A stretch of DNA of 46,717 bases from the NCBI GenBank assembly GCA_000320545.1, contig ADNK01001381.1:1-46717 (forward strand), in the 5' to 3' direction. This DNA comes from Bigelowiella natans CCMP2755. Its lineage: Eukaryota; Protista; Cercozoa. A program made the position numbers and the translations under genes. The notes under the pieces are model-generated. The model did not search any database and was not told where the DNA came from. It worked only from the letters and a program-made list of their open reading frames with translations. Positions 7,960-40,069 of this stretch are shown here, in pieces; within the stretch, counting starts at the first letter, position 1; every line of letters begins with the position of its first letter.

Positions 7960-9342
7960 ATGTCGATCGCACCTATGTCACGCGTTATGAAGGGGGGTTT
8001 GCGCTCTCAGGGCTTCATTGTGAGGGCGGGGGGAGCGCTGAATAAGCACCGCTTCTTCTCCACAAGCCTTAGCGTAGACCAGCTTAAGGGAGAAACAGTT
8101 GGCGTGTGCGTTTCCGGGGGTCTTGATAGCCGCACGGTCTCCTCACGCCTGCAGGAGGCAGGGGCCAAGGTCATAGGGTTCTGTGCTGACCTCGATCAAC
8201 CCGATGAGGAGGACATCATGGACGTCAAGACGAAAATGGCACCATGCGGTGTAGATACATTCATCGTCGATCTCAAGGACGACATCGCTGAGATGGCCTT
8301 CGAGGTGATCAAGGCGCAGGCGCGCTATGACGGGGGGTACTGGAATACGACCGGTCTCGCGCGCGCCGTCACCGTGAGGGGACTCTTGGACGAGATGCAG
8401 CGACAGGGCTGCACGGTGCTTTCCCATGGGGCCACCGGAAGGGGAAACGACCAGATTCGCTTCGAGCGCTACACGAATGTTCTCAGCCCCGGCTTCAAGG
8501 TGTACGCGCCATGGCGAGACCCAGCGCTCCTCAAGGAGTTCCCCGGCCGCAAACAGATGGCGGACTACCTCATGTCGAAGGGAATCGAGGCTTCCGTGGG
8601 AGCTAAGAAGCGGTACTCTACCGACGCGAACCTGGCTGGGCTATCGCACGAGGCGGAGGACCTCGAGTTCCTGACGACATCTTCGCGAATCGTCGAGCCG
8701 ATGATGACGTGCTGGCCGGAGGACGCCCCCGACTCCGTGGAGAAGGTTAGCATCACGTTCAGTGAAGGATTCGCACACATTATCAACGGAAAGGAGCTCT
8801 CGCCGCTCGAGATGATGCGCGAGGCGAACAAGATCGGCGGGCGCAACGGCCTGGGCATGTCCAACGCCATGGAGAATCGCGTGATCGGGACGAAGTCGCG
8901 CGGCGTGTACGAGGCTCCAGGCATGGATCTTCTTGGCTACGCCCTCTCCCAGGTCTATCAAACCGTCTTAGACAAGCGCTCGAGCGACCTCTTCGCGCAG
9001 CTGTCGCGATTCGTTTCAGGCCAGATCTACGACGGGCGCTACTTCGACCCCTCCACGCGTGCCGCGCTGACGGCTATCGATATGCTTGCATCTCGCGCGT
9101 CGGGCAAGGTTGACATCAGCTTGTATAAAGGAACGGCCTTCATCGACAGCATCACAGATGTGCCTCACAGCTTGTACGTGGAGGAGTTCGCATCGATGGA
9201 AGCAGACGAGGGGGAGCAGGAGGGCCTGGACCCCAGCAGCGCGCAAGGCTTTGTTGAGGTGCAACGCTGCGAGGCTATCGCACTCGCTAAGGCCGGCCAC
9301 ATCCAGGCCAGACGCAAGATTGGTACGGATGGGGAGGACTAA
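7960..9342 (+). CDS. argG: Argininosuccinate synthase, intronless, with an N-terminal mitochondrial-type presequence
   Basis: Motifs SGGLDS, SHGATGRGNDQIRF, YSTDANL and ENRVIGTKSRGVYEAPG. The first ~38 aa are Arg/Ser-rich and lack acidic residues. Confidence 0.95.
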   Translation: MSIAPMSRVMKGGLRSQGFIVRAGGALNKHRFFSTSLSVDQLKGETVGVCVSGGLDSRTVSSRLQEAGAKVIGFCADLDQPDEEDIMDVKTKMAPCGVDTFIVDLKDDIAEMAFEVIKAQARYDGGYWNTTGLARAVTVRGLLDEMQRQGCTVLSHGATGRGNDQIRFERYTNVLSPGFKVYAPWRDPALLKEFPGRKQMADYLMSKGIEASVGAKKRYSTDANLAGLSHEAEDLEFLTTSSRIVEPMMTCWPEDAPDSVEKVSITFSEGFAHIINGKELSPLEMMREANKIGGRNGLGMSNAMENRVIGTKSRGVYEAPGMDLLGYALSQVYQTVLDKRSSDLFAQLSRFVSGQIYDGRYFDPSTRAALTAIDMLASRASGKVDISLYKGTAFIDSITDVPHSLYVEEFASMEADEGEQEGLDPSSAQGFVEVQRCEAIALAKAGHIQARRKIGTDGED

Positions 9343-15726: not shown

Positions 15727-17613
15727 GCACGCACGCACGCACAGTACACTGGCCAACGAAATTAACCCTCTCCCTCCGCCTGCTTTCCTTATCACTTACT
15801 CCGCACCACACCCCTAGCGGATGAGCACCAGTCCGAAGAGATCCGAGAATGCGACAGAAGAAGGGAATTCATCTCAAACTTCGACGGCTCCGCGGCGACG
15901 TGCGCGATCACGGAGAAGGAAGCGTTTTTGTTCACCGATGGCCGATACTGGACCCAGGCCGTTCAGCAGGTGATTCATAAACGCATTAGTAGTGCTCATG
16001 TACGATTATTATCAGTAGCAGTAGTAGTAGTACCAGTAGTAGCAGTAGTAGTAGTAGAAGTAGTAGCAGTAGCAGTAATAGATGGGAGCGAGTCCCTGCC
16101 AGGAATAAGTTCACTCTCATCTTATTCGTCGTATTTGAACCCCCCCCCTCCTCCTCCTCCACCTCAGATAAGCTCCGACTGGCAGATGCAAAAGTGCGAG
16201 ATGACAAACTGGCTTTATACATTTTCCCTCCCGAGATCCATCACCACCAGCAGCAGCACCAGCAGCAGCACCAGCAGTAGGAAAGGCCAAAGCAATGGCA
16301 GTGGCACGGTTGCCAGAAGCAGTTTAAAGAAAGAGGCAATTGATAGAAATGACAAAGCCAATGCCCAAGGCAGTAGTATTAGCTCCAAAGACACGCCAAA
16401 AATCACTAACAGTAAAGGGGGGGCAGCAGAAATGAAGATCGAACATGTAGATACCAGCTCCAAGGCTAGTATCACCCCGCTCCCCCTGAGCAGCAAGCAC
16501 CAACATAGTAGCAGTAGCTCCTCCAACAGCAGCAGTCCCACTAGTAAGGGAGAGGCGACGGAGCAGAAGACCAGCAGCAGAGGCAACAACGACAAGAACA
16601 ATAGCAGCAATAACACAAGCCAGAGTGATGGCCAACGCAACGGCACCGATAATAAAGATAGCAGCCCCGTCCCTGAGAATCACCACCACCACCACCACCA
16701 CCACCGCCGCCGCCATCACGGCCGTGACACCGCCGATAGCGAAATTGAAGAAGGCGATACCAGAGCTCTATCGTCCCCGCCGGCTCCCCTGCGTATCGGC
16801 TACGACGCCTCTACGACATCGATTGCGGAGTTCCTCAGCTGGAGCATGGTCCTGGGCAACGGCACGCAGCTCGTCGGCAGCACGTCCACGCACCAGGGCA
16901 ACCTGATCGATCGAGTGTGGAAGCTCAACGGCACGCGCCCCCCCTGCACGGAGTATGCCATCCGGCCGCACAACGTGTGTTTCGCGGGCGCCTCGGTCGT
17001 GTACAAGATCGAGGCCGTGCGGAGGAAGATGCGGGAGAACGGCGCCCAAAGCATCGTCGTGGCAAAGCTCGATGAGCTCGCATGGCTGTATGTAACAGCG
17101 CGAACGAAACACAACGCGCATACACTCATACAGACGCACAAACACGCGAGAGAGACGCGAGAGAGAGGCATGAATCATCATCATCATCGCCCTTCTCCCA
17201 TGGATCGCTTCCCTTCCAACTCAAACAACGAGAACAACACAACAACAACCATATCTCTCTCAGGTACAACCTGCGGGGCGGCGACATGCCCTACTCTCCA
17301 ACGTTCTGGGGATACGGCGTGGTAGGAAAGGACTTCGCTCGGCTCTACGTGAGGGTCCATCAGCTCGCCCCGGAGGCGCACGATATGCTATCGAAGGCAG
17401 GCGTCGAGGTGATGATTCTCTTCTCCACCGCTTGTCATATTGATGATAGGGGTGGTCGCTGGTTGCTGGGGTGCTGCTGCTGCCGCCGCTGCGGTCAAAA
17501 ACACGGTCTCTGTGATGGTGAAGCAGTAGCCGCGCATGCAAACTGGAGTCGCTCCCCCCATTTGGATAATGATGTGTATATATGTATATATATAGTTGTA
17601 AACATGTGTGTGC

Positions 17614-17659
<46 letters not shown>

Positions 17660-17865
17660 TCTTCCGCCCGATAACAAAAAACCACAAAAAACGACCGCAG
17701 ATTGTTGATTCCGACACCATTCCGCGGGAAAGGATTGCGTGGCTACGCGACCACGCAGCTCCTATATGGATGGATCCCGAAAGCTGTAACATGCACATCT
17801 ACAAGTAAATAGTAGGAGCAGTAGTAACTGTCGTAGTAGTCGAAGTAGCAGCAGTTGCAGTAGCT

Positions 17866-20871: not shown

Positions 20872-22982
20872 CTAAAGAGCTTTCTCTTCAACCAATTTGT
20901 TGAATACATTGATTAGAAAGCATTTGTCCTTGATTAATTTGCAAATCTCATCAGAATTGTCCATATCGGAGCTCATTTCATGGATTTTCCGCACGAGAAG
21001 GATTGCAGTCCGGGGATTCATATTGACTCTCGTGATTGCAGCTGAAATGTTACACAGTGTATCATCGCAGAACGAGATCAACAAGAATTTAATCTAACGA
21101 AAAGATGCATATGTACCCTCCAGTTTTGTAAAATGGTAAGGCTTGACATTTTCCCTGATCAAAGTCTTATATTTTGAATCTTCAAAGTCATAAACTCGTT
21201 CCTTGAAAAAATTCTTAAACTTGATCTTGGGCAAACCTTCCAACTTCAGGTCTTTTTTCTGTTGAAGAATGAATTAGATTACTAAACCAAACTCGATGAC
21301 GAATCATATGCATGTACACAGAGAAAACACCAAAACCGCACATTGGAGTCGCAGCCCTTCACTTCGATCGGAGTCAAAGATGTTGTGAGAATGTGCAGCC
21401 TTGGGTTTAGGATCATGAGATTCTTGAAGAGTTTTTCACGATCCTCGGCTTTAACGCCTTCTACGTCGTCGATTATCTGGGTACATGAATATGGTTGCAT
21501 AAGAATGTTCAAAGTTGGGAATTAACAGCATTAGCACCAAGAGTATCGGAGGATTATCTTTCTTCCTAAAGAATCCCTTGATCAATCCATAAGGATCACA
21601 ATTTTCAGCTTTTTTCGTGGGAAATGATTCATCCTCGATGAGATTCTCCATGAAATTTTGCATCACTCCGTCTCCACTCTTTGCCCCAGTAACCTAAGCC
21701 ATGCAGAAAACACTTTCAGCAGAAGTCAAATTTTGTGCGTGAGTGCATGATGCCTCTACCCAAAAGATGCCATCAGGTCCTTCTGTGTCGTAGAGACTTA
21801 GACGCCAGGAAATGAACTTAGCCACTGAAGTCTTTCCTATATTCTTAGGTCCTGTGATTTGCACCCAGCGATGACGGATTGAGTTTTTATCATCAAATTG
21901 CAGAGCCGAGTGTAGATTCCGTTGAAGTTGCAGATAGTGATCAGTTCCCCACTTAAGCTGCTCGCAGAAAGGATCGGGATAGAATTTAATTGGGGGAGCA
22001 GGATGCCATGTTTTGATTTTTGCGAAGGGGGGGAAATAAGGTTTAAATGAGAATGCGATGTCATGATTCCCATCTTTAGGCAGCAAAAGACACTCTTTGA
22101 CCTCCTCATAAAGCTGTTCTGCCCTTTTAGTCAACTTTTTTGTCCGACTTTTGTATTCATGATACACATTACGTATTCTAGGGTCTGCTATGTATTTCTC
22201 AAGATTATCAGCCTTTTTTATCAAAACGCCAGCCTCTTTTTTGAGGTCACTGGCCATGTCTTTTAGCTTTTCCTTTGCAGATTTGAATGAGGTAGAAACT
22301 GTAGCACCGCACAGCAATCTCTCGAAAAAAACCGTCTGAAATATCTGCACAGCTTCATTACCCAGTAATTTATTCTTATTACAAACTATTATGTGATCGA
22401 CTACTTTCGAATCAACAAATCCTTTAGCTACAGCTTCGCTCCCGCATGCCGCCAGCATTAATACTTTTAAAGAGCACATCTTTGGAGTTCTTTTCGTCTC
22501 CATAATCAATCGGGAAAACTCATCAGGGCTCACGTATACTGCCTTTCCCCCAGGATTGTCGGATTCGAACTCGAGGTAAGTTGTCTTTCCTTCAGGGTGG
22601 TCGGGTTCCAACTTGAGGCCATGTTGTTCTCTGCAATGAGAACCCACTAGTAATGCGAAGCATTTCGATCGCAGAGCTCTAGAGACATTCTCTTTAGTAG
22701 CTCTCCACTTGGATATGTGAAGCTTGCTGCGTTTGACAACGGTACCATCTTCGTGTTTCGTACAATTCACTTTGCTCATATCTTGCAACATTGTGAGATC
22801 TTTCTCTAAATCCAGCATGGACTTCGGTTTGTCTAATGGCAAAGCAAATGCAAATGCCAAGTGCGCAGGTACTTCCTGAAAAAGATTACAATGCTAAACC
22901 GCATAGATAAAGGTGAACATTAAAGATGGAGACAGATAGTCAACATTCTCTTTACTCCCCCCCCCCCCCCTCCCCCTCTCTC

Positions 22983-23068
<86 letters not shown>

Positions 23069-26000
23069 GCGTGTGCGTGTGCTTGTGTTCTATCTTGCCA
23101 AAAACTAAATATGCTTTCGTGGAACCGAATGGTACCTTAGTGTTTATGAGCGGTTTCACCCAAGCTTCCAATTTCGCATCAAAATCAGTGGCGTTTTTAG
23201 CGTTACGAAGCTGCGATCCTCGTTCCACCCACATTAAATCAATAAACCTGGGTATTAGGATATTAACCCAGCAAAGATTATGTTAGAGACGAAATACAAT
23301 ATCGATCTACTTACACAGATATGCAACGTATAACAAGACATGAATCAAAACTTGACGGTACTCTTCGAAAGTGATTCTTCCACTTGTAATAGCAACAGGA
23401 GATAGGCTCTTCATCAGGCTTGTGCACTCAACGCTTTCCGAAGGATACAATAACTGTAAAATGTAGAATCTTTATTATACTCCTGCTTTCTTCCCCTCTC
23501 CCCCTCCTCTCTCTCGTTGTGTGTAGTATGCATGCATGCATGCATGTGTTTGTGTATGTGTGTGTGTGAATGTAAATGTTTGAACCTCTTCATTCTATCA
23601 ACGTTACTTATACATTCGTATACATCCTCTTTCGTGCTCATAACATGCATCATATATCCAGGTACCTTAAATATTTGCGTTACGATCGTCAATTTGATGA
23701 ACTTCTTGCTGTTATCGTTGCCAAAGTCTTGCGATGAGGATTCACACCGTTGGGTAAATGTGTAACTGCAAGGAATTTATCATGATAACGGAGAATGGAA
23801 AATGTTCTATTCAACATGAAGTCGCTGTAATCTTTCTTTTTTCAATTTCCCATATGTTTAGATTGTCAATCTAATTAACTTCACATTCTACGTATCAAGT
23901 TACCGAAGTGTTGCGTTTTCGAAGAAAATGTCGTAGAACTGCTCCCAATACCGTAAATGCGTTATTTCCACCATTTTGGGGGCTGTATCGGAGGTTTTCT
24001 CAGAGACAACCTTGGTTTCCTTGTTTTTGCAGGCTTTTTCCCACTTGTCATACTTCACGGGATACCTCATCGAACTGCAAATACATGGATAAGATCCTCT
24101 GGTTAAGTCAACAACTCATAGTAGGAAACTGATCTAGCTGCAACATAAATACTACTACAGATTCTGAAATCTTTTGACACAGTCATGCACACACGTACCA
24201 ATCGAAAAGAAGTACGCTGAAATCCAGGGCGTCATTGTTTTTGTACGGCCACTTGTGTACACTTCTGGCGATCTCCAGAATGAATTTCAATATCCTATTG
24301 GACACAATTTGCTGTGGATCTACTATCTTGCGCGTTTTGCTCAATATTCACAAGAGGCACTAATGTAATACCAGTACGTACCTCGCACAGTGTCCAATTT
24401 CAGACAGAACTTCGACATTTATTGCCATTACATGCCTTTTCCTCCCACTAAGAACATATATCTTACATTATATTTTTGTGAGGTTGCGATTGTGGAAGTG
24501 TTAGGCTATTTCAAGACCTTTTGTTTCTTTCTAGCATTGAGGTACTAATCCGGAAACGCAAGGGTTCAAGATATATTTCCGCTTTTCCTTTGCCAAAAAT
24601 CTGATGTAAACAAAGGAGAGAGATAAGTTCAGAGTGACCACAAAATCCTTGCATATGTAAAACATGTCGAGAGTAGAAACTGCCGAATTCTACCTGTTCC
24701 TCTAAGATCATTGGGCTTGTAGCTCCTGAACATAAAAAACAATCGTACAAAAAAATGGGAATATGAGAAGCTTGTGATTACTACTTTTCACTCTCCTCCA
24801 CACACTTTTGATTACCTCCCCGAAGTTCTTTTGTGCGTTTGCTTTCAGACGAGAGCTCCGTGACTGAGTCGTGCACATACCGCATAAACAAATATACAGA
24901 TGGGGAGAGGAATTGTATACATTACTGGACATCGAAGATGTAGAAATTTAATATGTGACTCGAAAATTATGAAGAACACTCTTCTCTGCTAGAGATTGAT
25001 TTTAAACTATGGTAATTGGCATAATAATTCACCAATACCTATGTTCCCGGAAAATGTCTCAAAATAAGACCGCGGCCGAAGGCGTTTGAAGAGTAAGGAA
25101 AACATTCCAACAACTGTGTGCTCCTTTCGATCCATGCTTTCTCCCTTGGCTTGCATCATCGAAGGCACCAAATACTTTTCCGTTCCACCGATCTTGCATA
25201 ATATCATGAACCTATTTGGAGATGCAAAGGAGACGAAGATAGCCGAACAATTAAGGGAGAACCATATTCTTCGCGATTGATGAAAACTACACCGGTATTT
25301 TCGTTTTTCTTCACCAAGAACAGAGGAATAACAGTGTCAATCCATATTGTTTACCAAGCGTCGTACATGACATAAGCATTGGTGATTCCCAATCCAAGTT
25401 CTTTTTTCACGTTTACATTTGGAAAATAAATCAATGCACTACTTCTGTAATATCTTCCGGCTGAACTCATATAGCCTCTTATTTTCGGCTACTTTTGGAC
25501 CATCATCAGTGAGCATTAGGTGTTTTAACACCACATCGTGTATGACTCCAATATCGAGAAATCTACATTATAGGAATATCACACATCTCAATTCAAGTTT
25601 GACTAACAATTTTAATTAGCACTTCAGAATATGTATCTTCCCCAATGTTTGGGCTCTAAATCCATGAAATGTGCTGAACATGATATTGCTTCACTTACTC
25701 ATCCACAAGCTTTCCGTGCTGAGCAAACCTAAATATGTTGGAAGAGACTGTCTGATGAAATCTCATTGGACACAGAGCAATAAAACGAATAAATATGAAT
25801 TTTATAATGTATGTATTACAGCTCTTGATTCTTGTATAATTTCTTGTGCAAGCGCCGATCAAATATCAGCTTCTTCACCAGATCAACGAGGTGTTGCGGT
25901 CGCATTACGATGTGCTGTCGATTAGCATATTCATCATGCGATTTTTACGTAAGTTTCAGAGAAGATTCGATAGGACTGATACTCACGTCTCGCAGGCCAT

Positions 26001-26709
26001 CTTCGTCGAAATATATCGCTACTCCTAGATCATAAAATCTGAAATTTGAGATTTCACGGATGCTATGAGGAAAGTGAGAAATTATTATTCTTCATTTCGC
26101 AACTTACTTTTGCAACATCAAGCGCACTTCTCCCTTATCAACGATCCCACGCTTAAAACATATCTCTTCAATCGATTCCAAAGTAAATATCGCCTGTTCT
26201 GTGGAAATCAGATCGTCGCATACTTTTGTCCATTGGGATGGTACTTCCTCATTTGCCTAGTGTGTCATCCCACAGATGAGTTGGAAGTGCGAAAATGAAC
26301 CATCACGTATCAGTATAATTGTGGCGTAGTTTACCAAATATAAATGAATATTCATCTCCTTTACCTTTGGATTGTTCTTCAGAGTTTCCATCACCTCGTT
26401 ACGCAGTTCCATAATCGTACTGTGCACTTTCTTATCACTCGATCGGAACCTAAAGGCGATGATAACAATACGTGAGATGATGAAATCGGCTAAAGGGTCA
26501 AGACAGAGCAAATCAGCACGAACGACGATGATTGACTGGACAGCATTAAATCCGCTGTACTTGCTGTCAGCAGGAAAGAACACCAAATCCGCAGGTTCAG
26601 AAGACTTTTCTGGGCGCCAGCGTTTACATCGAGGCCACGGAAAGTGTTCAAAGCCCTCAAAAACCTGACGCACACGCATACACACACACACACACACACA
26701 CACGCGCAC

Positions 26710-26753
<44 letters not shown>

Positions 26754-26960
26754 GTTAGAGTAAGAGAGATGTCATATGTAATTACATTGTGGCCTACTAA
26801 TATACCTCTCTCGCCATTTCTGTGATTTGCTGGTCGATTGAGTCGAGGACCTCCAAGAGCGCCTTTTTAGTGGATGGTATGCAAACGTTAACAACGATAC
26901 ATAACTGTACGATACTTACTAACACGTGTATACAATACATAGGAGTACGATACTTAAAAC

Positions 26961-27004
<44 letters not shown>

Positions 27005-30000
27005 TGTGTAGCATGTGTGTTTGAGAGCATTTCTTACCTCTGGGTCATTATATTCTTCGAGTTTATCGATCTTCATTCCCACAAGTATTATTGGCGCCCC
27101 GGGAGCAAACGTGCGAATGTTTTGAAGCCAGAATCTCAGGTATTCTTCTGCCTTCTCTTTCTGCTTCGCTGCCTCGTTACCTAATAGTTTACGTTAGACA
27201 GTATGTAATCTCTTAAAACGTTTTTGTCGTACCTTCTTTCTCTCTTTCTCTCTCCCTCTTTCTCCCTCTTTCTCTCTTTCTCTCTCTTTCTCTCTTTCTC
27301 CCTCTTTATCTATCTGTATAAGTTCATGAAATATGCAAAGGTGCACCCAGCTATTGTAGCCTTTGGATCAGATAGCTTAAAACAAATGATACCTTTGGCA
27401 TCATTCTCTCTCCCAAGGAACTCCTCAAGGGAAAACACCACCATATAGAGGCAATTGTGGTTCAGAAACATTACATGCGATGTGTAGAACACCTCCTGCC
27501 CTGCAAAATCCCAGACCGACACCTGCATTCATTAGGAGGAGATAATTGGTCGAGTGATCACGCAAAACATTCGTAGTCACACACACATACACACACACAC
27601 ACACACAGGCACATACCCGGATAGCTTCCGGATTCTTAAGGGATTCCTGTATAAGCCCGGGTTTTAGTTCCTAATGGTGTTTCAAGGATAATCAGCAAAT
27701 CGCGCTTGGGATGTAATATGGACGTAATCAGTTGCAACTTCACTACATTCTCATCAAGACTCATTCGGCACCTTGAGAAGCGTCTCCTCGACTTCTCCAC
27801 TTCGTTTGTGCAGTTTCTTTGATTCCGTGGCATCTTCATCGACTATACTTTTCTTTGTTGAAGAACCTTTGATATGCTCTTTCCCTTCCACAGCTACTAC
27901 TGCTGCTGCTGTCTCCGTATCCGTTTTCGCATTCTTCACATCGCTGGGAGACTTCCCTTTTTTGTCATATCTGCAAGGAATCTGGGATAAAATCATACAC
28001 CGCACAATGGTCATTGGCATGCATGCAGTATATCTTAATCACATTGACGACTTCATTCAGAAATATTTGGATCTGTCTACCTTCGAAGTATCATTCTCCT
28101 CCTCCTGTGGCCTCTGACTCTTTAAATAGGCCAATCCCAATGCTCTCTCATGATTACCTCCTATGCAAACGACATTTTGACAATTATCCACAGGACAATT
28201 ACTTTACAAAATAAATGGAACTTTACGAACATATCGTAATTACCATGTTCGATAGTCTTAAATATAGTTTCTCTATTGTCGTCTCCCTTAACATCCTCAT
28301 CTGTTTTCTCCACGGTTACGTCATGGACGGTGACATCTGCCAGCACCTGCATATGATAGTGTACAAGGGAAACTGCATGAATACATAAATATTTCCTTTT
28401 CAAAAAACGATTATTTTTTGTATCTATGACATCATAACCGTTGATTCGACGTCGCAAAACTCTTCGCCCTTCAAAGCCTTGTATAACGTCGTTTTACCAG
28501 TATGTTCTTTACCAACTATCATCACGCGAGATCGTCGCCACGGTACCGTGATAGCAAATAGCCTTTTAATAGCCTCCATAGAGAGGGAGTTGTCTGCATC
28601 CTGAGCGCACAAAAAGCCGAATGATGTAGGAGGGCGCAACAAAAGGATTGGAAACGAGAGAAAAGGGACAACAGTTAATCAATTCTTGTTGTCGGGATAT
28701 AATGGATAGCCAAACGCCTTATTCAAACATCAAACATTGTTTATATTTCGTATTTCGTATCTGAGAATTTTAAGACAATCCCTGTCGTTTTGAACATACG
28801 GAATATTTAATCGCATTAGGCATGTACCAAAAATACATCGCATTGGGCATGTACTAAATCATACATTGTTGTTTTGGTTCGCCGTCCTAAGGATTCTGTC
28901 GATACGCTCATTTGCTAAATCCGACGCAGTCCAACCTGGCAAATTCAGGTGCGCGCAGCAAATGATGATAATTCGAACGAAACAGAAAAACAACGAGCGA
29001 ACAAGCGGTCAACTAATTAACCAACATTCTTCGACAACTAGCACCAAACACCGCAATCACCCATAAGCACATACAAGCACACACAAGCACACACGAATAT
29101 AAACATACAAACATATGCACTCAAATAATTAAACACTCTCTCTAACACTCTCAAATCCCTCTTGTTTTTTACATCATCATTACTTGCATCCTCATGATTG
29201 GTATCAAGATTGGTATTTGTCGTTCGTTGATGATGGGACAGTTTGATGGTTTCATTTTCCTCCTCCTCCTCCTCCTCCTCCCCCTCTTTCTTCCTTTGCT
29301 ACTACTCATGCTCTCAATTTCACATGACATCTTCATGCTCATTTGGCGTGATGATTCCTGCTCTTCTTTGGTGTCATTCTATCCCTCAATGTGCATGAAA
29401 GAATCCTGCCGCACTAACTCGAATATTATTACTCACCGTTATTATCCTTCGCCTCGATGTTCGCCTTCGACTCAACCAGATACGTCACGATCCTTTCGTG
29501 TTAACGTCCCGACGCATAGAACAGAGGGGTTTCACCTGGCAAAACAAAGCACCCAACAAATCATCATTCGGAAATGACAGTACATCAAACAACAAACAAA
29601 AGAATCTGCTAAGTTACCAGCCTCATCAAAAAGGCTAACACCAAATGCTATGTACTTCCACAAATGCACACTGTTAAATGCACATCGGCCATTCATGACA
29701 TGAGCAGTATTGGCATCCTCATGATTGGTATCAAGATCGGCATTTGTCGTTCGTTGATGATGGGACAGTTTGATGGTTTCATTTTCCTCCTCCTCTTTCT
29801 CCTCTTTCTTCCTTTGCTACTACTTGTACTCTCATTTTCACATGGCATCTTCATGCTCATTTGGTGTAATGATTCCTGCTCTTCATTGGTGTCATTCTAT
29901 CCCTCAATGTACATGAAAGAATCCTGCCGCACTAACTCGAATGTTCTTACTCACCGAAACTATTCTTCGCCTCGATGTTCGCCTTCGACTCAACCAGATA

Positions 30001-32189
30001 CGTCACGATCCTTTCGTGTCCATGAAATGACGTATAGAACAGAGGGGTTTCACCTGGCAAAACAAAGCACCCAACAAATCATCATTCGGAAATGACAGTA
30101 CATCAAACAACAAACAAAAGAATCTGCTAAGTTACCAGCCTCATCAAAAAGGCTAACACCAAATGCTATATAACTCCACAAATGCATACTGTTAAATGCA
30201 CATCGGCTCTTCATAACATGAGCAGTATTGGCATCCTCATGATTGGTATCAAGATCGGCATTTGTCGTTCGTTGATGATGGGACAGTTTGATGGTTTCAT
30301 TTTCCTCCTCTTCCTCCTTCTCCTCCTCCTCCTCTTTCTTCCTTTATTACTACTTGTACTCTCATTTTCACATGGCATCTTCATAATCATTTAATGTGAT
30401 GATTCCTGCTCTTCATTGGTGTCATTCTATCCCTCAATGTACATGAAAGAATCCTGCCGCACTAACTCGAATTTTCTTACTCACCGAAACTATTCTTCGC
30501 CTCGATGTTCGCCTTCGACTCAACCAGATACGTCACGATCCTTTCGTGTCCATGAAATGACGTATAGAACAGAGGGGTTTCACCTGGCAAAACAAAGCAC
30601 CCAACAAATCATCATTCGGAAATGACAGTACATCAAACAACAAACAAAAGAATCTGCTAAGTTACCAGCCTCATCAAAAAGGCTAACACCAAATGCTATA
30701 TAACTCCACAAATGCATACTGTTAAATGCACATCGGCTCTTCATAACATGAGCAGTATTGGCATCCTCATGATTGGTATCAAGATCGGCATTTGTCGTTC
30801 GTTGATGATGGGACAGTTTGATGGTTTCATTTTCCTCCTCCTCTTTCTCCTCTTTCTTCCTTTGCTACTACTCATGCTCTCATTTTCACATGACATCTTC
30901 ATGCTCATTTGGTGTAATGATTCCTGCTCTTCTTTGGTGTCATTCTATCCCTCAATGTACATGAAAGAATCCTGCCGCACTAACTCGAATGTTCTTACTC
31001 ACCGAAACTATTCTTCGCCTCGATGTTCGCCTTCGACTCAACCAGATACGTCACGATCCTTTCATGTCCACGTCCCGACGCATAGAACAGAGGGGTCGTA
31101 CCTGGCAAAACAAAGCACCAAACAAATCATCATTCGGAAATGACAGTACATCAAACAACAAACAAAAGAATCTGCTAAGTTACCAGCCTCATCAAAAAGG
31201 CTAACACCAAATGCTATATAACTCCACAAATGCATACTGTTAAATGCACATCGGCTCTTCATAACATGAGCAGTATTGGCATCCTCATGATTGGTATCAA
31301 GATCGGCATTTGTCGTTCGTTGATGATGGGACAGTTTGATGGTTTCATTTTCCTCCTCTTCCTCCTTCTCCTCCTCCTCCTCTTTCTTCCTTTATTACTA
31401 CTTGTACTCTCATTTTCACATGACATCTTCATAATCATTTAATGTGATGATTCCTGCTCTTCATTGGTGTCATTCTATCCCTCAATGTACATGAAAGAAT
31501 CCTGCCGCACTAACTCGAATATTATTACTCACCGTTAATATTCTTCGCCTCGATGTTCGCCTTCGACTCAACCAGATACGTCACGATCCTTTCGTGTCCA
31601 TGAAATGACGCATAGAACAGAGGGGTTTCACCTGGCAAAACAAAGCACCCAACAAATCATCATTCGGAAACAACGGTACATCAAACAACAAACAAAAGAA
31701 TCTGCTAAGTTACCAGCCTCATCAAAGAGGCTAACACCAAACACTACACAACTGCCCAAATACACACTTAAGTACACATCAGTTATTCTTAACATGAGTT
31801 TTATTTGCATCCTCATGGTCAACATCAATGAAGGTTGCTGCTGTTTCCTACAAATCCACTAAACTTTAGCCTCTGCATGAAGTGACATCATCATTCGAAC
31901 TCAAGCTCATTGTGCTTCATGAAAAATGTCAACTCCGTCGTCCCCCATCACGAACTTTGCTTGTTTCATGACTGCTCCGTGCTCTTTTCCCATTCATTTT
32001 TTTCTCGTCAACCCTTCGAACATTCTTCGCCCAGAGTCTCGCTATCCCTGCCTCTCTCCGTTCCCAACCAAACTAACCATTTTTATCCTTCTGTTCGATG
32101 TCTGCATTTTTCTTGATCAGCAGTTTCAGCGTAGTTAGGTCATTCTTCTCCACAGCTTCCCAGACCTCCTTGCTCAGTCCGCCTCCCAT
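20872..32189 (-). CDS. ROCO-family multidomain protein: N-myristoylation motif - ankyrin repeats - ROC GTPase - COR - unknown region - CHAT (caspase-like) protease - STAND-type P-loop NTPase; >25 exons
   Basis: Exon 1 is MGGGLSKEVWEAVEKNDL...ADIEQKDKN, followed by five ankyrin exons and a cap GWTASDLA. ROC: G1 VMIVGKEHTGKTT (~28490-28520), G3 VWDFAGQEVFY (~27490-27520), G4 PIILVGMKID (~27065-27095). COR: EEVPSQW and FYDLGVAIYF. CHAT: ATKENVSRAL..LLVGSHC..LEFE..LMLAACGSE..FFERLLCGATV. STAND: Walker A ITGPKNIGKTS and Walker B LL|IIDDVE. Most exon phases I checked between COR and CHAT are compatible; one donor (~23316) is ambiguous. Confidence 0.8.
29186..31817 (-). repeat. Tandem array of five exon+intron units (periods 518/530/518/530 bp), each with a 99-nt single-ankyrin exon
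   Basis: Exons at 31533-31631, 31003-31101, 30485-30583, 29955-30053 and 29437-29535. All are bounded by ccag|GT...G|gtgagt (phase 1-1), and the introns are near-identical. Confidence 0.95.
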
Positions 32190-32429
32190 TCTTCTTCCAG
32201 TTGCCGAATAGTTGGAATGTAACCCCAATGCAAATCTCGAGAAATCTCACCACATGTAACATTGCGATAACTGACACACCTTGATCACCAGGGCGTCGTC
32301 AGGGCGTCATCCGGGTATTTTGGAACAAATGCTGGAGGTTTTGGAGTTGCGACATGAATTTTCCATGGATTTATTAATGACCAACTGCGGAGTCGAGTAT
32401 GCTCAGTATTGTCTTCATTGTTCCTCAGG

Positions 32430-34022
32430 ATGGCTGCCGCACGGCCGGGGTTCCGGCATGGCGTCGCCCGCATTCGCTCATCGTCCGTGGCCGCTGCAGC
32501 TGCTGCTACCTCTTCCCATCCGATAATACGAACCCGTCAAGAATGTGACGTGATAATTGTTGGGGGTGGGCACAACGGAATGGGTAGTGACAGATTCGAA
32601 TGCTCTTCCTTCTTCTTCCTTCCGAGCATGAGGTACATGTGTCCTAAATAACATATCGACAGTCTCGGCCGCATATCTAGCCCGTGCTGGTTTGGATGTC
32701 ATGGTTCTCGAACGTCGTGGGATTTTAGGAGGAGCGGCAGTGACGGAGGAGGTCGTGAAGGGCTTTCGATTCTCCCGTGCATCGTATCTAGCGGGTTTGC
32801 TGCGGCCCAGCGTCATCCAAGACCTCAGCCTGCACAAACATGGACTCAAGTGCTGTGCATTATTGAAAATATGTGAGAGGGGGGAAGAAGGCGCAAAAAT
32901 GCGCCGCTTGTTGCGCGGCAATCCGCAACTACACATTTTACTTCAACTAATACGATTGTTCAAAGGTACCTTGTGCGCGATCCTTCTTCCTTCACACCAT
33001 CTCTTGTTGACGGACCTCTCGGTACAACAAACCATTCCTCATGACTTCAGCATTCTGAGGGTGGAAGAGCTTTAGTTGGGCATCAGGCCCATGCTAGCAT
33101 GGCACGTCTACCGTATAATAGTCCTGATGTTGTTGAAACAGGTGGGCGCAGCTTGCTTCTCGGCTCGGACATGGATGCGACGTGTGCCTCAATTGCACAA
33201 TTCTCCGAGAAAGATTCGAAGGTAAAATGCTCTCTTTTCTCAAAGAAGAGTAAGGAGGTGGGGTGTAGTCTGAAGCGCGTGGTTGCCTTTTTTGCAAGGG
33301 TGGGAGCGTGTACACGCGGTCTGTGGTTGGCACTTCTCGTTAGATTTTGCGTGCCTCACCGTACATACCAAACAACAACAACAACAACAACAACATGTGC
33401 ATATTCCAAGAACTGAGTTCGCACTCAGTAAGTTTACTTGTATCAATTTTGAAAAATCTCTCAGGTCTACCCCCTCTACGAGGAGTTTCTGGCGGAGTGC
33501 CGAGAGATTCTCCGCCCGCTGCTCGACGGCCCCCCTCCTGATCCATTCCAGGGCCGCTATTACGAGCGCAAGCAGGCCGCGACCACGCTGTATTCCCTAA
33601 TCAAAAACGCCGCGCGGCACCGAGGGACTCTGGGCGCTCTATATGTCAGGGAGATTAACAACTCCTCCCCTTTTCACCGTCCCCCCTTCTCATCTGATCA
33701 TTGCTTCATTTTCCTCATTGGCAGTGGTGGTGGTTGGTAGTCTAATATCTCCTCCTCCTCCTCTTCCTCCTCCACCCGTTTCATCCAGGAACTACTGACC
33801 GCCCCTGCCTGCCATGTGCTGGATAAATGGTTCGAGAGCGACATGTTAAAGGCCACACTGGCGTGCGACGCAGTGATTGGAGCTATGATATCTCCCCGAG
33901 ACGTCGGATCAGGTTGCTGCTCCTGTGTTACCATTCCGTTGTTTATAATACATCGTTGTCGTGACATAGTGTGAGGAGATCCACGCTCATCACATCACCT
34001 CATCACACACACACACAATATT

Positions 34023-38362: not shown

Positions 38363-40069
38363 TCATGCTCTTTTCATGTCGTCAGCAACATCCGCAACTA
38401 CAGCATCACTACCCTCCCTAGAAGCAGTTACGGAAGTACCATCATGGTGATCGCTCCCATCTTTTATTCCCATTGTCTTTCCTGTGAGATCCGGAACAAA
38501 CATGCATGAGAATGACAGCGATACGATTCCGATGACGACGTACACACTGAATGTGCCACCATAGCCTAGAAGGCTAACCAAGCTCAAGTAAGTGGAAGCG
38601 ATCGTAAAAGACCCCAGTCTATTCACTACAGAGCCTAAGGCCATACCCTTAGAGCGATAAGGCCCATGGAAAATTTCAGCTAAAATAAGCCAGCACATGG
38701 GGCCATAACCGAAACCGAAGGCTGAGACGAACATCAACATTCCCGTTATGATCATCCTCTCAGTGACTACAGTATGGCCATACAGGCCCGCCGCAGCCAT
38801 GATCCCCATGGAAATAACTCCGAAAAAGCCCCCGACGATGACTGGCAATCGTCGGCCGACTTTGTTATTGTCCACCAGTAGAGCTGCGAAGCACGTGAAT
38901 GTGAGCTTGCAGAGGCCCATTCCGAGTGTCACCTTAAGCGCTAGCCGCTCGTCTGCCCCAAAATTAGAGAGTGTGTGAACAGAGTAAAAGATAATCGAAT
39001 CAATCCCTGGTAGCTGCGTGAGAATGGAGAATGTCAGCCCTACAAATAAAGCACTCCGCGTCTCCCTCGAGGTGAACATCTCGCCCCAAGAAGCCATTTC
39101 CTTTTGAGACTGCATATCACGGCCCATCTCCAGCATCGTTTGTCTTACCACACGGTCTTTGGTATCCTGAGACTCGCTTGCATCTACCAGCTGCTCAATC
39201 ACCCCCGCAGCCTCGACCAGCTTCTTTTGCTTTAGGAGATATGCGGGCGACTCGGGCATCAAGACAACCATAATCGCCAGCAAAATAGCAGGAATCGATC
39301 CGGAGGCCAGCATGTACCGCCAGTCATTCTCAATGCCGCGAAGAAGTAGGCCGACGAGGTAAGCTAGAGGGATCCCGACGTTAATGAACATTTCGTTGAA
39401 AGATGTCAAGCGACCACGCTCACGGCGAGGAGCCAGTTCAGCACAGAATATGGGGCAAATCACTAATCCCATACCGACTGCAATTCCAGTAACACAGCGC
39501 CAGAGCAGAAGAGCGCCGAAGCTGAAGGATGAGGCCATTCCGATGGAGCCGCCTAGAAAGATCAATGCAGCCGCGAGCAGCCCTACTTTGCGCCCCAAAC
39601 GGTCAGCTACCACGCCAGCGACGAGAGATCCGATAATTGAAGTGAAAATAATGCTGGATGTGACGAACTGTAGCTGGGTATCGGTGAGAGAGAGGTCGTT
39701 CTGAAGTGGGATGAGTGCGCCACTGATTATACCAAGATCAAATCCGAGGAGGAGAGATCCAAAAGCGGAGGTAATAATACATCTGTATAGAAAGCTGTTC
39801 CTTATTGTAAAACTAAGCAGGATATCTGCATCGTCTACTTTGGACTTTCTGTCCTCCTGCTGCAACAGTCCGCGACGCTCGTGAGCAATCCCATCACATT
39901 CCAGGCGATGGTTAATGTCGTCGTACATGTAATTATCGTCGTCGCTGTGGTCCGTGCGACCAAGACCGGGATCGTGATGAGCGACATCTACACGGCTTTC
40001 GCTCATGGAGGGAGAAGCCTGATCATTTCGTTCCTCCCCAAGATGCCCGAAGTTGGCGGTGAGAACCAT
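38363..40069 (-). CDS. MFS sugar porter (polyol/inositol/hexose transporter-like), single long ORF
   Basis: GFDLGIISGA, ADRLGRK, AELAPRRERG, WRYML, MPESP, LTQLPGIDSIIFYS, GRR and GPMCWLILAEIF; about 12 TM segments. Confidence 0.95.
   Translation of the reverse strand: MVLTANFGHLGEERNDQASPSMSESRVDVAHHDPGLGRTDHSDDDNYMYDDINHRLECDGIAHERRGLLQQEDRKSKVDDADILLSFTIRNSFLYRCIITSAFGSLLLGFDLGIISGALIPLQNDLSLTDTQLQFVTSSIIFTSIIGSLVAGVVADRLGRKVGLLAAALIFLGGSIGMASSFSFGALLLWRCVTGIAVGMGLVICPIFCAELAPRRERGRLTSFNEMFINVGIPLAYLVGLLLRGIENDWRYMLASGSIPAILLAIMVVLMPESPAYLLKQKKLVEAAGVIEQLVDASESQDTKDRVVRQTMLEMGRDMQSQKEMASWGEMFTSRETRSALFVGLTFSILTQLPGIDSIIFYSVHTLSNFGADERLALKVTLGMGLCKLTFTCFAALLVDNNKVGRRLPVIVGGFFGVISMGIMAAAGLYGHTVVTERMIITGMLMFVSAFGFGYGPMCWLILAEIFHGPYRSKGMALGSVVNRLGSFTIASTYLSLVSLLGYGGTFSVYVVIGIVSLSFSCMFVPDLTGKTMGIKDGSDHHDGTSVTASREGSDAVVADVADDMKRA

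What the first reader, a model, noticed from the sequence alone, without database searches (positions are those of the whole stretch)
20872..32189. Ankyrin-ROC-COR-CHAT-STAND fusion: a candidate single-chain immune/cell-death receptor-protease
Seen: ROC G1/G3/G4 motifs and COR-type motifs, then a CHAT domain that keeps the His (GSHC, 22636-22638) and Cys (LAACGS, 22444-22446) of the caspase-fold dyad, then a second NTPase with Walker A GPKNIGKTS (~21826-21852), DGIFWV, Walker B LLIIDD and ILTTS. Established: ROCO proteins, CHAT proteases and STAND NTPases each occur in defence and death signalling. I do not recognise two nucleotide switches plus a caspase-like effector downstream of a variable ankyrin sensor as a described architecture. 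The STAND domain is C-terminal and lacks the usual trailing TPR/LRR/WD40 sensor. Inference: ligand binding at the ankyrins drives dimerisation or oligomerisation and activates the protease.
Basis: partly seen in the sequence, partly recalled or inferred. Interest (0 to 1): 0.85.

Follow-up and report, generated by a model that had tools for sequence, protein, structure and literature searches.

The report
Algal ROCO GTPase fused to caspase-like protease

Summary
Window 20872-32189 (minus strand) carries a 34-exon gene model with one open frame of 1523 aa and canonical GT..AG at every intron. Spliced RNA contigs from three studies show 17 of the 33 introns.

Domain order:
- N-terminal Met-Gly (myristoylation-type start)
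- ankyrin repeats, one per 99-nt exon
- Roc GTPase
- COR
- EF-hand-like linker
- a short C-terminal STAND-like P-loop NTPase with no sensor repeats after it

The organism is Bigelowiella natans.

CHAT is not found by Pfam on this sequence directly. It is supported by a family profile (SAVED-CHAT, 8tl0, E 1.5e-19), by the predicted fold, and by the His/Cys pair being invariant in 72 relatives.

The junction from the last linker exon into the CHAT exon (23136 to 22875) is inferred, not seen. One run retains an intron that would stop the protein after COR.

It is less unprecedented than claimed. A bacterial Roc-COR-CHAT protease is published, and the CHAT-NTPase cassette usually sits C-terminal to varied sensors. 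I found no eukaryotic ROCO-CHAT-STAND report.

This scan had already noted paralogous copies on other DNA of this genome.

The parts
20872..32189 (-). Whole gene model: 34 exons and one open frame of 1523 aa, from the ATG at 32189 to the stop at 20872-20874.
   Evidence: Frames and splice sites were checked locally. Every intron is GT..AG. 17 introns are shown by spliced RNA contigs.
32078..32189 (-). Exon 1: start codon, N-terminus MGGGLSK (Met-Gly...Ser, the N-myristoylation type) and a first partial ankyrin repeat.
   Evidence: There is an in-frame stop upstream and no earlier ATG. MG..S is kept in the C2355 and C3059 copies. Pfam Ank is weak here, E 0.013.
29955..31631 (-). Four ankyrin cassette exons of 99 nt, each phase 1-1: 31533-31631, 31003-31101, 30485-30583 and 29955-30053. 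They lie in tandem units of about 530 bp.
   Evidence: Pfam Ank gives 24.4-29.5 bits against a cut-off of 21.1. The exon scan is and the unit repeats. Variable positions are 1, 5, 6, 9, 10 and 30-32; the framework is nearly fixed.
29437..29535 (-). A fifth ankyrin cassette with intact splice sites but an in-frame TAA. The model skips it.
   Evidence: Sequence reading. Whether it enters the mRNA was not tested.
28865..28935 (-). Half-repeat exon that caps the ankyrin array.
   Evidence: It is in frame with canonical splice sites and is 100% conserved in C2355.
26561..28600 (-). Roc GTPase exons. G1 at 28490-28513, G3 at 27496-27510, G4 at 27065-27076, G5-like ADSK at 26449-26571. Exon 27772-27842 is inferred only.
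   Evidence: Pfam Roc hits profile positions 1-29, 57-91 and 89-119 on three successive exons; the G3 exon scores 31.3 bits. The genome-wide scan gives 30.7 bits at 27421-27531.
24199..26449 (-). COR region (COR-A, then a COR-B-like part), model residues about 450-793.
   Evidence: Pfam COR-A positions 1-44, E 0.046. The only PDB hits are the four C. tepidum Roco constructs, at the start of COR, E 0.5-1.5. The region is homologous to the ROCO loci L024 and L025, which pass the COR-A cut-off. All introns here are seen in RNA.
23136..24074 (-). Linker exons 23904-24074, 23666-23765, 23362-23453 and 23136-23247, with a degenerate EF-hand-like motif (GRITFEE|FIDLMW) that spans a junction.
   Evidence: RNA contig pieces end at 23904, and bin depths fit the exon ends. 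Conserved at protein level in C2355, C1548, C3059, C3238 and C3236. Pfam EF-hand_1 is weak, E 0.11.
23766..23903 (-). Intron that is spliced out in runs X1 and X5 but retained in a contig of run X9. Retention brings a TAA at 23900-23902 into frame and would end the protein after COR (about 849 aa).
   Evidence: table 8: X9 record 14 is contiguous over 23737-24074, whereas the X1 and X5 pieces end at 23904. Frame.
22876..23135 (-). Microsatellite-rich intron ((CA)n, (TA)n and a G run) just upstream of the CHAT exon. It is the breakpoint of the mosaic between paralogs. The junction across it is inferred.
   Evidence: Tandem repeats. Identity switches here. The acceptor at 22875 is used in RNA of the near-identical C1554 copy.
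21760..22875 (-). Large exon of 372 aa: CHAT caspase-fold domain (about 22276-22875), a long helical hairpin, the LLLPKDGNHD motif (22060-22089) and Walker A (21826-21852).
   Evidence: AlphaFold2 model with pLDDT 86. Foldseek top hit is SAVED-CHAT 8tl0 at E 4.4e-10, followed by MALT1, metacaspases, Csx29 and caspases. The family profile hits 8tl0 at E 1.5e-19. dN/dS is 0.15-0.3.
22636..22638 (-). Catalytic His codon (model residue H1031, in VGSHC).
   Evidence: Invariant in 72 aligned relatives. It follows the strand at exon residues 74-78 in the model.
22444..22446 (-). Catalytic Cys codon (model residue C1095, in LAACGS).
   Evidence: Invariant in 72 aligned relatives. It follows the strand at exon residues 138-142 in the model.
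20872..21693 (-). Rest of the P-loop NTPase in four exons: Walker B LLIIDD (21465-21543, across an intron), ILTTS (21378-21392, no sensor-1 Arg), GxP-like NPRTAI (21001-21018), stop at 20872-20874. There is no winged helix and there are no repeats.
   Evidence: Two introns joined in RNA (21477-21537, 21694-21759) and a third (21259-21341) placed from a loose end. Family profile against PDB: AfsR, Apaf-1 (4e-12), Sr35, Roq1. The close-family profile gives only Apaf-1 at 0.039. The model of paralog P0002 shows a nucleotide-binding domain plus a helical lid.

Best explanation
This is one expressed gene of Bigelowiella natans. It encodes a single-chain, NLR-like sensor-protease of 1523 aa (model).

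Domain order: a myristoylation-type N-terminus; about 5.5 ankyrin repeats built from one-repeat exons; a Roc-COR GTPase of the LRRK2/DAPK1 type; a degenerate EF-hand-like linker; a CHAT caspase-fold cysteine protease with an intact His/Cys dyad; and a shortened C-terminal STAND-type P-loop NTPase.

Proposed mechanism:
- The variable ankyrin face binds a ligand or a guarded host protein.
- The Roc-COR switch and the short NTPase convert this into a nucleotide-dependent change of conformation or oligomeric state.
- That change brings CHAT domains into an active arrangement.
- The protease then cuts an unknown substrate, giving a defence or cell-death output.

Shown here: the gene structure, its expression, the domain identities, the conserved dyad, purifying selection, and cassette swapping among paralogs.

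Inferred: the last splice junction, membrane anchoring, activation by oligomerisation, and the immune or cell-death role.
For: Gene and expression:
- Spliced RNA contigs from three studies give 15 listed joints with GT..AG ends on the minus strand; loose ends give two more.
- The 34-exon model keeps a single frame.
- Exons are more conserved than introns against C1548 (0.84 vs 0.71) and C3059 (0.80 vs 0.65).

One gene rather than two:
- The same collinear order, ankyrin-Roc-COR-linker-CHAT-NTPase, is kept at C2355, C1548 and C3059, and in part at C3238. At C3236 the Roc-to-linker part aligns and CHAT matches lie about 2 kb further downstream.
- The JGI model P0002 joins the last linker exon to the CHAT exon in a paralog.
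- Reading on without that splice runs into microsatellite-encoded sequence.

Domains:
- Ankyrin and Roc by Pfam.
- COR through related loci.
- CHAT: 82 of the 87 profile relatives scanned carry Pfam CHAT; PDB 8tl0 at E 1.5e-19; fold match; His and Cys invariant in 72 sequences.
- NTPase: the best solved matches are AfsR, Apaf-1, Sr35 and Roq1.

Selection and family:
- dN/dS is 0.15-0.18 on the CHAT core.
- At least 45 cassette matches in the genome, with varied N-termini.
- Ankyrin variation falls at positions 1, 5, 6, 9, 10 and 30-32.

Precedent: the bacterial Roc-COR-CHAT protease cleaves gasdermin.
Against: - The junction 23136 to 22875 was not seen for this locus. The RNA contigs that end at 22875 come from the C1554 paralog.
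- Run X9 retains intron 23766-23903, which gives a stop after COR, and shows no depth on the three linker exons downstream of that intron.
- One ankyrin cassette carries a TAA.
- Pfam does not call CHAT on the window's own sequence. The close-family profile reaches Apaf-1 only at E 0.039.
- The NTPase lacks the sensor-1 Arg, the winged helix and the upstream GR motif of the wider family.
- No gasdermin match in the genome, but that search rang in no control genome either, so it says nothing about absence.
- The neighbouring genes are housekeeping.
- No functional data exist.
Confidence: 0.6

Rival explanations
1. Two products rather than one. The locus mainly makes an ankyrin-Roc-COR protein that ends at the TAA at 23900-23902 (retained intron). 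A separate CHAT-NTPase protein comes from an internal promoter. The fusion is then rare or an annotation artefact.
For: - The X9 contig is contiguous over 23737-24074, which brings the stop into frame. X9 has zero depth over 23091-23687.
- Stand-alone CHAT-NTPase paralogs with short, unrelated N-termini exist: the MMETSP transcripts P0151 and P0155, and C1554.
- The database holds no long fused protein for this family.
Against: - In X1 and X5 the contig pieces stop at 23904, the donor of that intron. Depth on the three downstream linker exons fits internal exons that end at splice donors.
- The linker exons are conserved at protein level in five paralogs.
- The CHAT exon starts at an acceptor in phase 0, with no Met until residue 21.
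- P0002 joins the linker to CHAT.
Confidence: 0.15
2. A decaying copy. This locus is a recently duplicated, recombined member of a fast-turnover family and no longer makes a full-length protein.
For: - In-frame TAA in cassette 29437-29535, whose splice sites are intact.
- The sister CHAT exons on C1548 and C3059 each carry a stop.
- Mosaic origin.
Against: - All the other 34 exons keep one frame and canonical splice sites.
- The cassette is phase 1-1, so skipping it is harmless.
- The gene is transcribed and spliced in three studies.
- dN/dS is 0.2-0.3 against four paralogs.
Confidence: 0.12
3. A real fusion, but not immune. It would be a regulated protease used in ordinary signalling (membrane traffic, cytoskeleton or cell cycle, as for LRRK2, or as proposed for TTC28), with the NTPase as a degenerate structural domain.
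For: - The neighbours are housekeeping genes.
- The NTPase lacks a sensor-1 Arg and a winged helix.
- No gasdermin match, although that search cannot show absence.
- ROCO proteins have many non-immune roles (PMC6337361, listed but not read).
Against: - Lineage-specific expansion, cassette swapping and variation concentrated at positions I take to be the ankyrin binding face are hallmarks of conflict genes.
- The closest characterised analogues act in defence or cell death.
Confidence: 0.13

Closest known systems
Bacterial Roc-COR-CHAT protease of the Runella gasdermin operon (Johnson et al., bioRxiv 10.1101/2021.06.07.447441)
   Same: A Roc-COR GTPase sits directly upstream of a CHAT caspase-like protease in one polypeptide. 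That protease triggers cell death by cleaving a substrate.
   Different: It is bacterial. No ankyrin array and no P-loop NTPase after CHAT are reported, and its substrate gene lies next to it. I did not test homology of the two fusions as units: both scans of bacterial genomes found no relative.
DAPK1 and LRRK2 (animal ROCO proteins)
   Same: Ankyrin repeats, then Roc, then COR, followed by an output domain. DAPK1 is a cell-death regulator. This comparison rests on established knowledge of these families, not on a test here.
   Different: Their output is a kinase (plus a death domain or WD40). Here it is a cysteine protease plus an NTPase, and there is no kinase.
Brown-algal LRR-ROCO candidate immune receptors (PMC11378527)
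   Same: A ROCO scaffold whose N-terminal repeats are each encoded by one exon and are shuffled. Some SAR ROCOs have a C-terminal peptidase.
   Different: Their repeats are LRR, not ankyrin. The peptidase reported there is IPR009003, not CHAT, and no STAND domain is reported.
CHAT- or caspase-STAND (NLR-like) proteases of bacteria, and repeat-fused proteases next to fungal gasdermins
   Same: A caspase-fold protease fused to a NACHT-type NTPase, linked to gasdermin cleavage and cell death.
   Different: From my own knowledge of NLR-like proteins, not from the passages read, the usual order is effector, NTPase, then C-terminal repeats. Here, and in the cassette relatives whose tables I read, the sensor is N-terminal and the NTPase is last and short.
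SAVED-CHAT (PDB 8tl0) and Craspase TPR-CHAT (Csx29)
   Same: Best structural and profile match for the protease domain. The 8tl0 entry title names an activated filament, and the Craspase abstracts describe activation by RNA-induced rearrangement.
   Different: Their activators are a cyclic-nucleotide sensor or a CRISPR complex, not GTPase or NTPase domains in the same chain.
Apaf-1 apoptosome with caspase-9
   Same: A STAND NTPase paired with a caspase-fold protease. Apaf-1 is among the best solved matches of the NTPase.
   Different: Those are two proteins joined through CARD domains, and Apaf-1 has a winged helix, a second helical domain and WD40 sensors. Here the two are fused and the NTPase stops after its first helical lid.

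Membership tests
ROCO (Roc-COR GTPases) | Roc G domain with G1, G3 and G4 motifs | tested here: met
   Pfam Roc scores 31.3 bits (cut-off 27) on the G3 exon. The G1 and G4 exons hit profile positions 1-29 and 89-119 in the right order. Roc scores above Ras. Motifs are located.
ROCO (Roc-COR GTPases) | COR domain directly C-terminal to Roc | tested here: inconclusive
   Directly, only COR-A at E 0.046 and the C. tepidum Roco COR start at E 0.5. Indirectly, residues 442-553 align at E 2.5e-16 to loci that score 35.6 bits on COR-A (cut-off 35.3). The spliced protein was not sent to any search tool.
CHAT (Pfam PF12770, caspase-fold clan CD) | Passes the Pfam CHAT score cut-off | tested here: not met
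   No CHAT hit at E <= 1 on the window exon. Paralogs score 13.6-20.8 bits, below the cut-off of 24. More distant relatives P0007, P0009, P0043 and P0108 do pass it.
CHAT (Pfam PF12770, caspase-fold clan CD) | Homology to CHAT proteins by profile | tested here: met
   39/40, 17/17 and 26/30 of the profile hits carry Pfam CHAT. PDB 8tl0, a CHAT domain-containing protein, at E 1.5e-19 and at 1.1e-5 with the close-family profile.
CHAT (Pfam PF12770, caspase-fold clan CD) | Caspase-haemoglobinase fold with a His...Cys dyad after successive strands | tested here: met
   Model pLDDT 86. Foldseek finds 8tl0 at 4.4e-10, then MALT1, metacaspases, Csx29, legumain and caspases. H80 and C144 of the exon are invariant in 72 sequences.
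CHAT (Pfam PF12770, caspase-fold clan CD) | Proteolytic activity | not testable with these tools
   Needs biochemistry.
STAND NTPases (NACHT / NB-ARC) | P-loop with Walker A and Walker B | tested here: met
   GPKNIGKTS and LLIIDD.
STAND NTPases (NACHT / NB-ARC) | Profile similarity to STAND rather than to other P-loop classes | tested here: inconclusive
   The wide family profile hits AfsR at 8e-14, Apaf-1 at 4e-12, Sr35 and Roq1. NACHT or NB-ARC occur in many relatives. The close-family profile gives only Apaf-1 at 0.039, and Foldseek ranks classical AAA+ proteins as high as resistosomes.
STAND NTPases (NACHT / NB-ARC) | Helical lid with a GxP motif, winged helix, sensor-1 Arg and attached sensor repeats | tested here: not met
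   A GxP-like NPRTAI and a helical lid are present. There is no Arg after ILTTS, the protein ends about 40 residues later, and the P0002 model has only helices after the nucleotide-binding domain.
Ankyrin repeat proteins | Tandem 33-residue repeats that match the Ank profile | tested here: met
   Four exons score 24.4-29.5 bits against a cut-off of 21.1.

The most novel reading that the evidence does not exclude
B. natans holds a recombining repertoire of single-chain receptors. A germline-shuffled ankyrin face reports to a ROCO GTPase, and that GTPase directly gates a built-in 'mini-apoptosome' (CHAT protease plus a minimal STAND NTPase). This would be the first eukaryotic counterpart of the bacterial Roc-COR-CHAT death protease. 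It would also be a case where a Roc-COR switch controls a protease instead of a kinase. Regulated intron retention would give a protease-less isoform as a built-in brake.
Probability: 0.3. Interest if true: 0.8.

Novelty: new variant of a known kind. Interest (0 to 1): 0.62.

Why it matters
ROCO proteins are studied mostly through LRRK2, where Roc-COR controls a kinase by a mechanism that is still debated. A natural eukaryotic ROCO whose output is a caspase-fold protease offers a simple read-out (cleavage) for how Roc-COR transmits its nucleotide state.

It also links three themes usually treated apart: ROCO GTPases, STAND/NLR switches and caspase-like death proteases. It places them together in a rhizarian alga, far from animals, plants and fungi.

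The cassette swapping at a microsatellite intron and the one-repeat-per-exon ankyrin array suggest how protists diversify innate receptors. All of this depends on function, which is untested.

Tried and rejected
- Dimer prediction of the CHAT exon (two copies): no verdict, score 0.00. This is evidence neither for nor against binding.
- Two scans of metagenome contigs found nothing: one for the spliced junction 23136|22875 and one for the last linker exon. Records of this genome may be left out there.
- The search for homologous proteins with the CHAT exon returned only three proteins (P0002, P0001, P0004) and no long fused product.
- The look-up of encoding contigs for P0002: not on record.
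- Two scans of bacterial and archaeal genomes, with the CHAT cassette profile and with the Roc G3 exon profile, found no relative.
- Pfam on ten COR and linker exons: no COR hit, only a weak EF-hand hit.
- A profile of four COR-A exons against PDB: nothing. COR-B exon against PDB: nothing.
- Gasdermin (PF04598) in this genome: no match, but the controls did not ring either, so this does not show absence.
- I first modelled exon 23317-23453. I replaced it with 23362-23453 because C2355 and C3059 hit stop codons just after the FEE motif and because the shorter form gives an EF-hand-like junction. Read depth cannot tell the two apart.
- The spliced protein was assembled only inside local scripts, to check frames and to compare it with loci already fetched. 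It was not sent to any search, fold or family tool. All such searches were made exon by exon, by reference.


Full report
**What is there**

The window is a eukaryotic contig (G000:C2356, genome 91 Mb). The organism is Bigelowiella natans. The closest database protein, P0002, is EukProt/JGI model Bigna1 89319, and sister proteins are MMETSP transcripts.

Open frames on the minus strand between 32246 and 20875 are short. They carry ankyrin, Roc, COR-like, CHAT-like and P-loop sequence, separated by microsatellite-rich spacers.

**Gene structure and expression**

I laid four public runs on 21300-27250. The Logan contigs of three of them (X1, X5, X9) come from three studies. The index only guesses that they are RNA, but their contigs are spliced.

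- They gave 15 listed joints. Every one has CT..AC ends on the plus strand, which is GT..AG on the minus strand.
- Loose ends define further introns at 24448-24517, 21259-21341 and 27181-27392.
- With those introns, one frame runs from the Roc G4 exon to 23904.
- In X1 and X5 the contig pieces stop at 23904, which is a CG|GTAACT donor, with 49 more letters beyond. Bin depths fit an exon that ends at 23666.

From there I inferred exons 23666-23765, 23362-23453 and 23136-23247, and then the acceptor at 22875. I inferred the 5' part (ankyrin and Roc exons) from frames, splice sites and paralogs.

The full model has 34 exons, canonical sites throughout and one frame of 1523 aa, from the ATG at 32189 to the stop at 20872-20874.

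Exon positions are better conserved than intron positions against C1548 (0.84 vs 0.71) and C3059 (0.80 vs 0.65).

I assembled the spliced protein only in local scripts. Every database, family and fold search was made exon by exon, by reference. The joined search was left out.

**Is it one gene?**

For:
- The order ankyrin, Roc, COR, linker, CHAT, NTPase is collinear on the same strand at C2355, C1548 and C3059, and in part at C3238. At C3236 the Roc-to-linker part aligns and CHAT matches lie about 2 kb further downstream.
- The linker exons are conserved at protein level in these copies.
- The JGI model P0002 joins the homologue of exon 23136-23247 to the CHAT exon.
- The CHAT exon begins at a phase-0 acceptor.
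- Reading on without the splice would run the frame into (CA)n- and (TA)n-encoded sequence.

Against:
- The junction 23136 to 22875 was not displayed for this locus.
- The contigs that end at 22875 carry the two C1554-specific bases, and their loose end maps to C1554:3340. They show that this acceptor is used, but in a paralog.
- In X9 one contig is contiguous over 23737-24074. It therefore retains intron 23766-23903, which puts a TAA (23900-23902) in frame right after COR. X9 has no depth on the three linker exons downstream of that intron. A protease-less isoform is therefore possible.

I put about 0.8 on the fused transcript existing.

**Domains**

*Ankyrin.* Four 99-nt phase 1-1 exons pass the Pfam Ank cut-off. 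They lie in units of about 530 bp.

*Roc.* The G3 exon scores 31.3 bits (cut-off 27), and the flanking exons hit the matching ends of the profile.

*COR.*
- The direct evidence is weak: COR-A at E 0.046.
- The only PDB hits are the four C. tepidum Roco constructs, at the start of COR, E 0.5-1.5.
- Model residues 442-553 and 537-745 align to two other B. natans ROCO loci at E 2.5e-16 and 3e-10.
- Those loci score 35.6 bits on COR-A, against a cut-off of 35.3.

*CHAT.*
- Pfam does not call it on this sequence, and paralogs are sub-threshold.
- A profile of nine paralogs, searched against 1.84 billion proteins, found 2157 relatives. Of the 87 I scanned, 82 carry Pfam CHAT.
- The family profile hits the SAVED-CHAT structure 8tl0 at E 1.5e-19.
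- The AlphaFold2 model of the exon (pLDDT 86) matches 8tl0 at E 4.4e-10, then MALT1, metacaspases, Csx29, legumain and caspases.
- His80 and Cys144 of the exon (model H1031 and C1095; codons 22636-22638 and 22444-22446) are invariant in 72 sequences.
- dN/dS on the CHAT core is 0.15-0.18.

*NTPase.*
- Walker A and Walker B are intact.
- The wide family profile finds AfsR, Apaf-1, Sr35 and Roq1. The close-family profile reaches Apaf-1 only at 0.039.
- There is no Arg after ILTTS and no winged helix.
- The model of paralog P0002 (pLDDT 85) shows a nucleotide-binding domain and a helical lid only.

It is therefore a shortened STAND-like domain. Calling it a full family member would go beyond the evidence.

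**Family context**

- The CHAT-plus-P-loop cassette has at least 45 matches in this genome.
- It is attached to different N-termini: ROCO at several loci; TPR (C590 with 2253 aa, C1201 with 1459 aa); short unrelated leaders (C2840, C1554); and a tandem double cassette in one frame (C3401).
- Outside B. natans the relatives carry LRR_6, SPRY, Arm, TPR or SH2. In the members whose tables I read (P0070, P0055) the repeats precede CHAT and the NTPase is the last domain.
- None of the 87 scanned showed Roc or COR among the listed families. Only the 25 commonest families per batch are listed, so a single case could be hidden.
- This locus is a mosaic. Exon identity of the ROCO half is 93% to C2355 and 84% to C1548. 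The CHAT half is 73% to C2355 but 90-91% to C1548 and C1554. The switch falls in the microsatellite intron 22876-23135.
- Across 19 ankyrin cassettes from four loci, variation is concentrated at exon positions 1, 5, 6, 9, 10 and 30-32, while the framework is nearly fixed. By my own knowledge of designed ankyrin repeat proteins, these are the binding-face positions.
- A fifth cassette in this window (29437-29535) has intact splice sites but an in-frame TAA. Because it is phase 1-1, skipping it keeps the frame. I could not test this.

**How it most likely works**

I read it as an NLR-like single-chain sensor-protease. Ankyrins sense, Roc-COR and the short NTPase switch, and CHAT executes.

The published analogues are defence or cell-death proteases. 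The 8tl0 entry title names an activated SAVED-CHAT filament. The Craspase abstracts describe TPR-CHAT activation by RNA-induced rearrangement. The Runella Roc-COR-CHAT protease cleaves gasdermin.

Only the anatomy, expression and selective constraint are shown here. The activation route, membrane anchoring through the conserved Met-Gly...Ser start and the biological role are inferences.

**Novelty**

- Roc-COR-CHAT is named for a bacterial protease.
- ROCOs with one repeat per exon, and SAR ROCOs with C-terminal peptidases, are described.
- Protease genes fused to NACHT or to repeat domains are known.
- I found no paper that pairs Bigelowiella natans with the CHAT domain. Among the papers my searches listed, none describes a eukaryotic ROCO-CHAT-STAND protein.

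I therefore class it as a new variant of known kinds.

Earlier notes of this scan describe paralogous copies on other pieces of this genome with the same reading. I treated them as leads. The EF-hand-like linker, the variable ankyrin face and the bacterial precedent were each rechecked here.

Noticed in passing
window 23737-24074: Intron 23766-23903 is retained in a contig of run X9, whereas the X1 and X5 contig pieces stop at its donor (23904). The retained form has an in-frame TAA at 23900-23902 and would give an ankyrin-Roc-COR protein without the protease.
   Followed up: partly
window 29437-29535: A fifth ankyrin cassette exon has good splice sites but an in-frame TAA where the other copies have a Gly codon. 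The near-identical gene on C2355 has only four cassettes.
   Followed up: partly
window 22876-23135: The intron just before the CHAT exon holds (CA)n, (TA)n and a G run. It coincides with the point where the best-matching paralog changes from C2355 to C1548/C1554, which suggests cassette exchange by recombination there.
   Followed up: partly
window 31402-32923 and L019 (C2355): The 5' flank, including about 730 bp upstream of the ATG, is 95% identical to C2355, the contig numbered just before this one. The two copies may be a recent nearby duplication.
   Followed up: no
L011:5178-8489 (C3401): One 1104-aa open frame holds two CHAT-NTPase cassettes in tandem. The first is about 36% and the second about 60-68% identical to the window's cassette.
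   Followed up: partly
L010:3768-8144 (C1201) and C590: Intron-poor paralogs of 1459 aa and 2253 aa carry an ankyrin repeat, a long TPR array and about 550 residues with no confident Pfam match ahead of the same CHAT-NTPase cassette.
   Followed up: partly
L002 (C1548:9327-10517) and L004 (C3059:4828-5934): The CHAT exons of two ROCO-type paralogs each contain one in-frame stop (TAG, TAA), so some family members are probably pseudogenes.
   Followed up: no
window 7960-9339, 15928-17705, 38366-40069: The neighbouring genes look like housekeeping: argininosuccinate synthase, a protein with a creatinase/prolidase N-terminal domain, and an MFS sugar transporter. There is no cluster of defence-like genes in this window.
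   Followed up: partly
L024 (C3227) and L025 (C233): A second, more distant B. natans ROCO family has fewer introns across Roc-COR. I did not examine its output domains.
   Followed up: no
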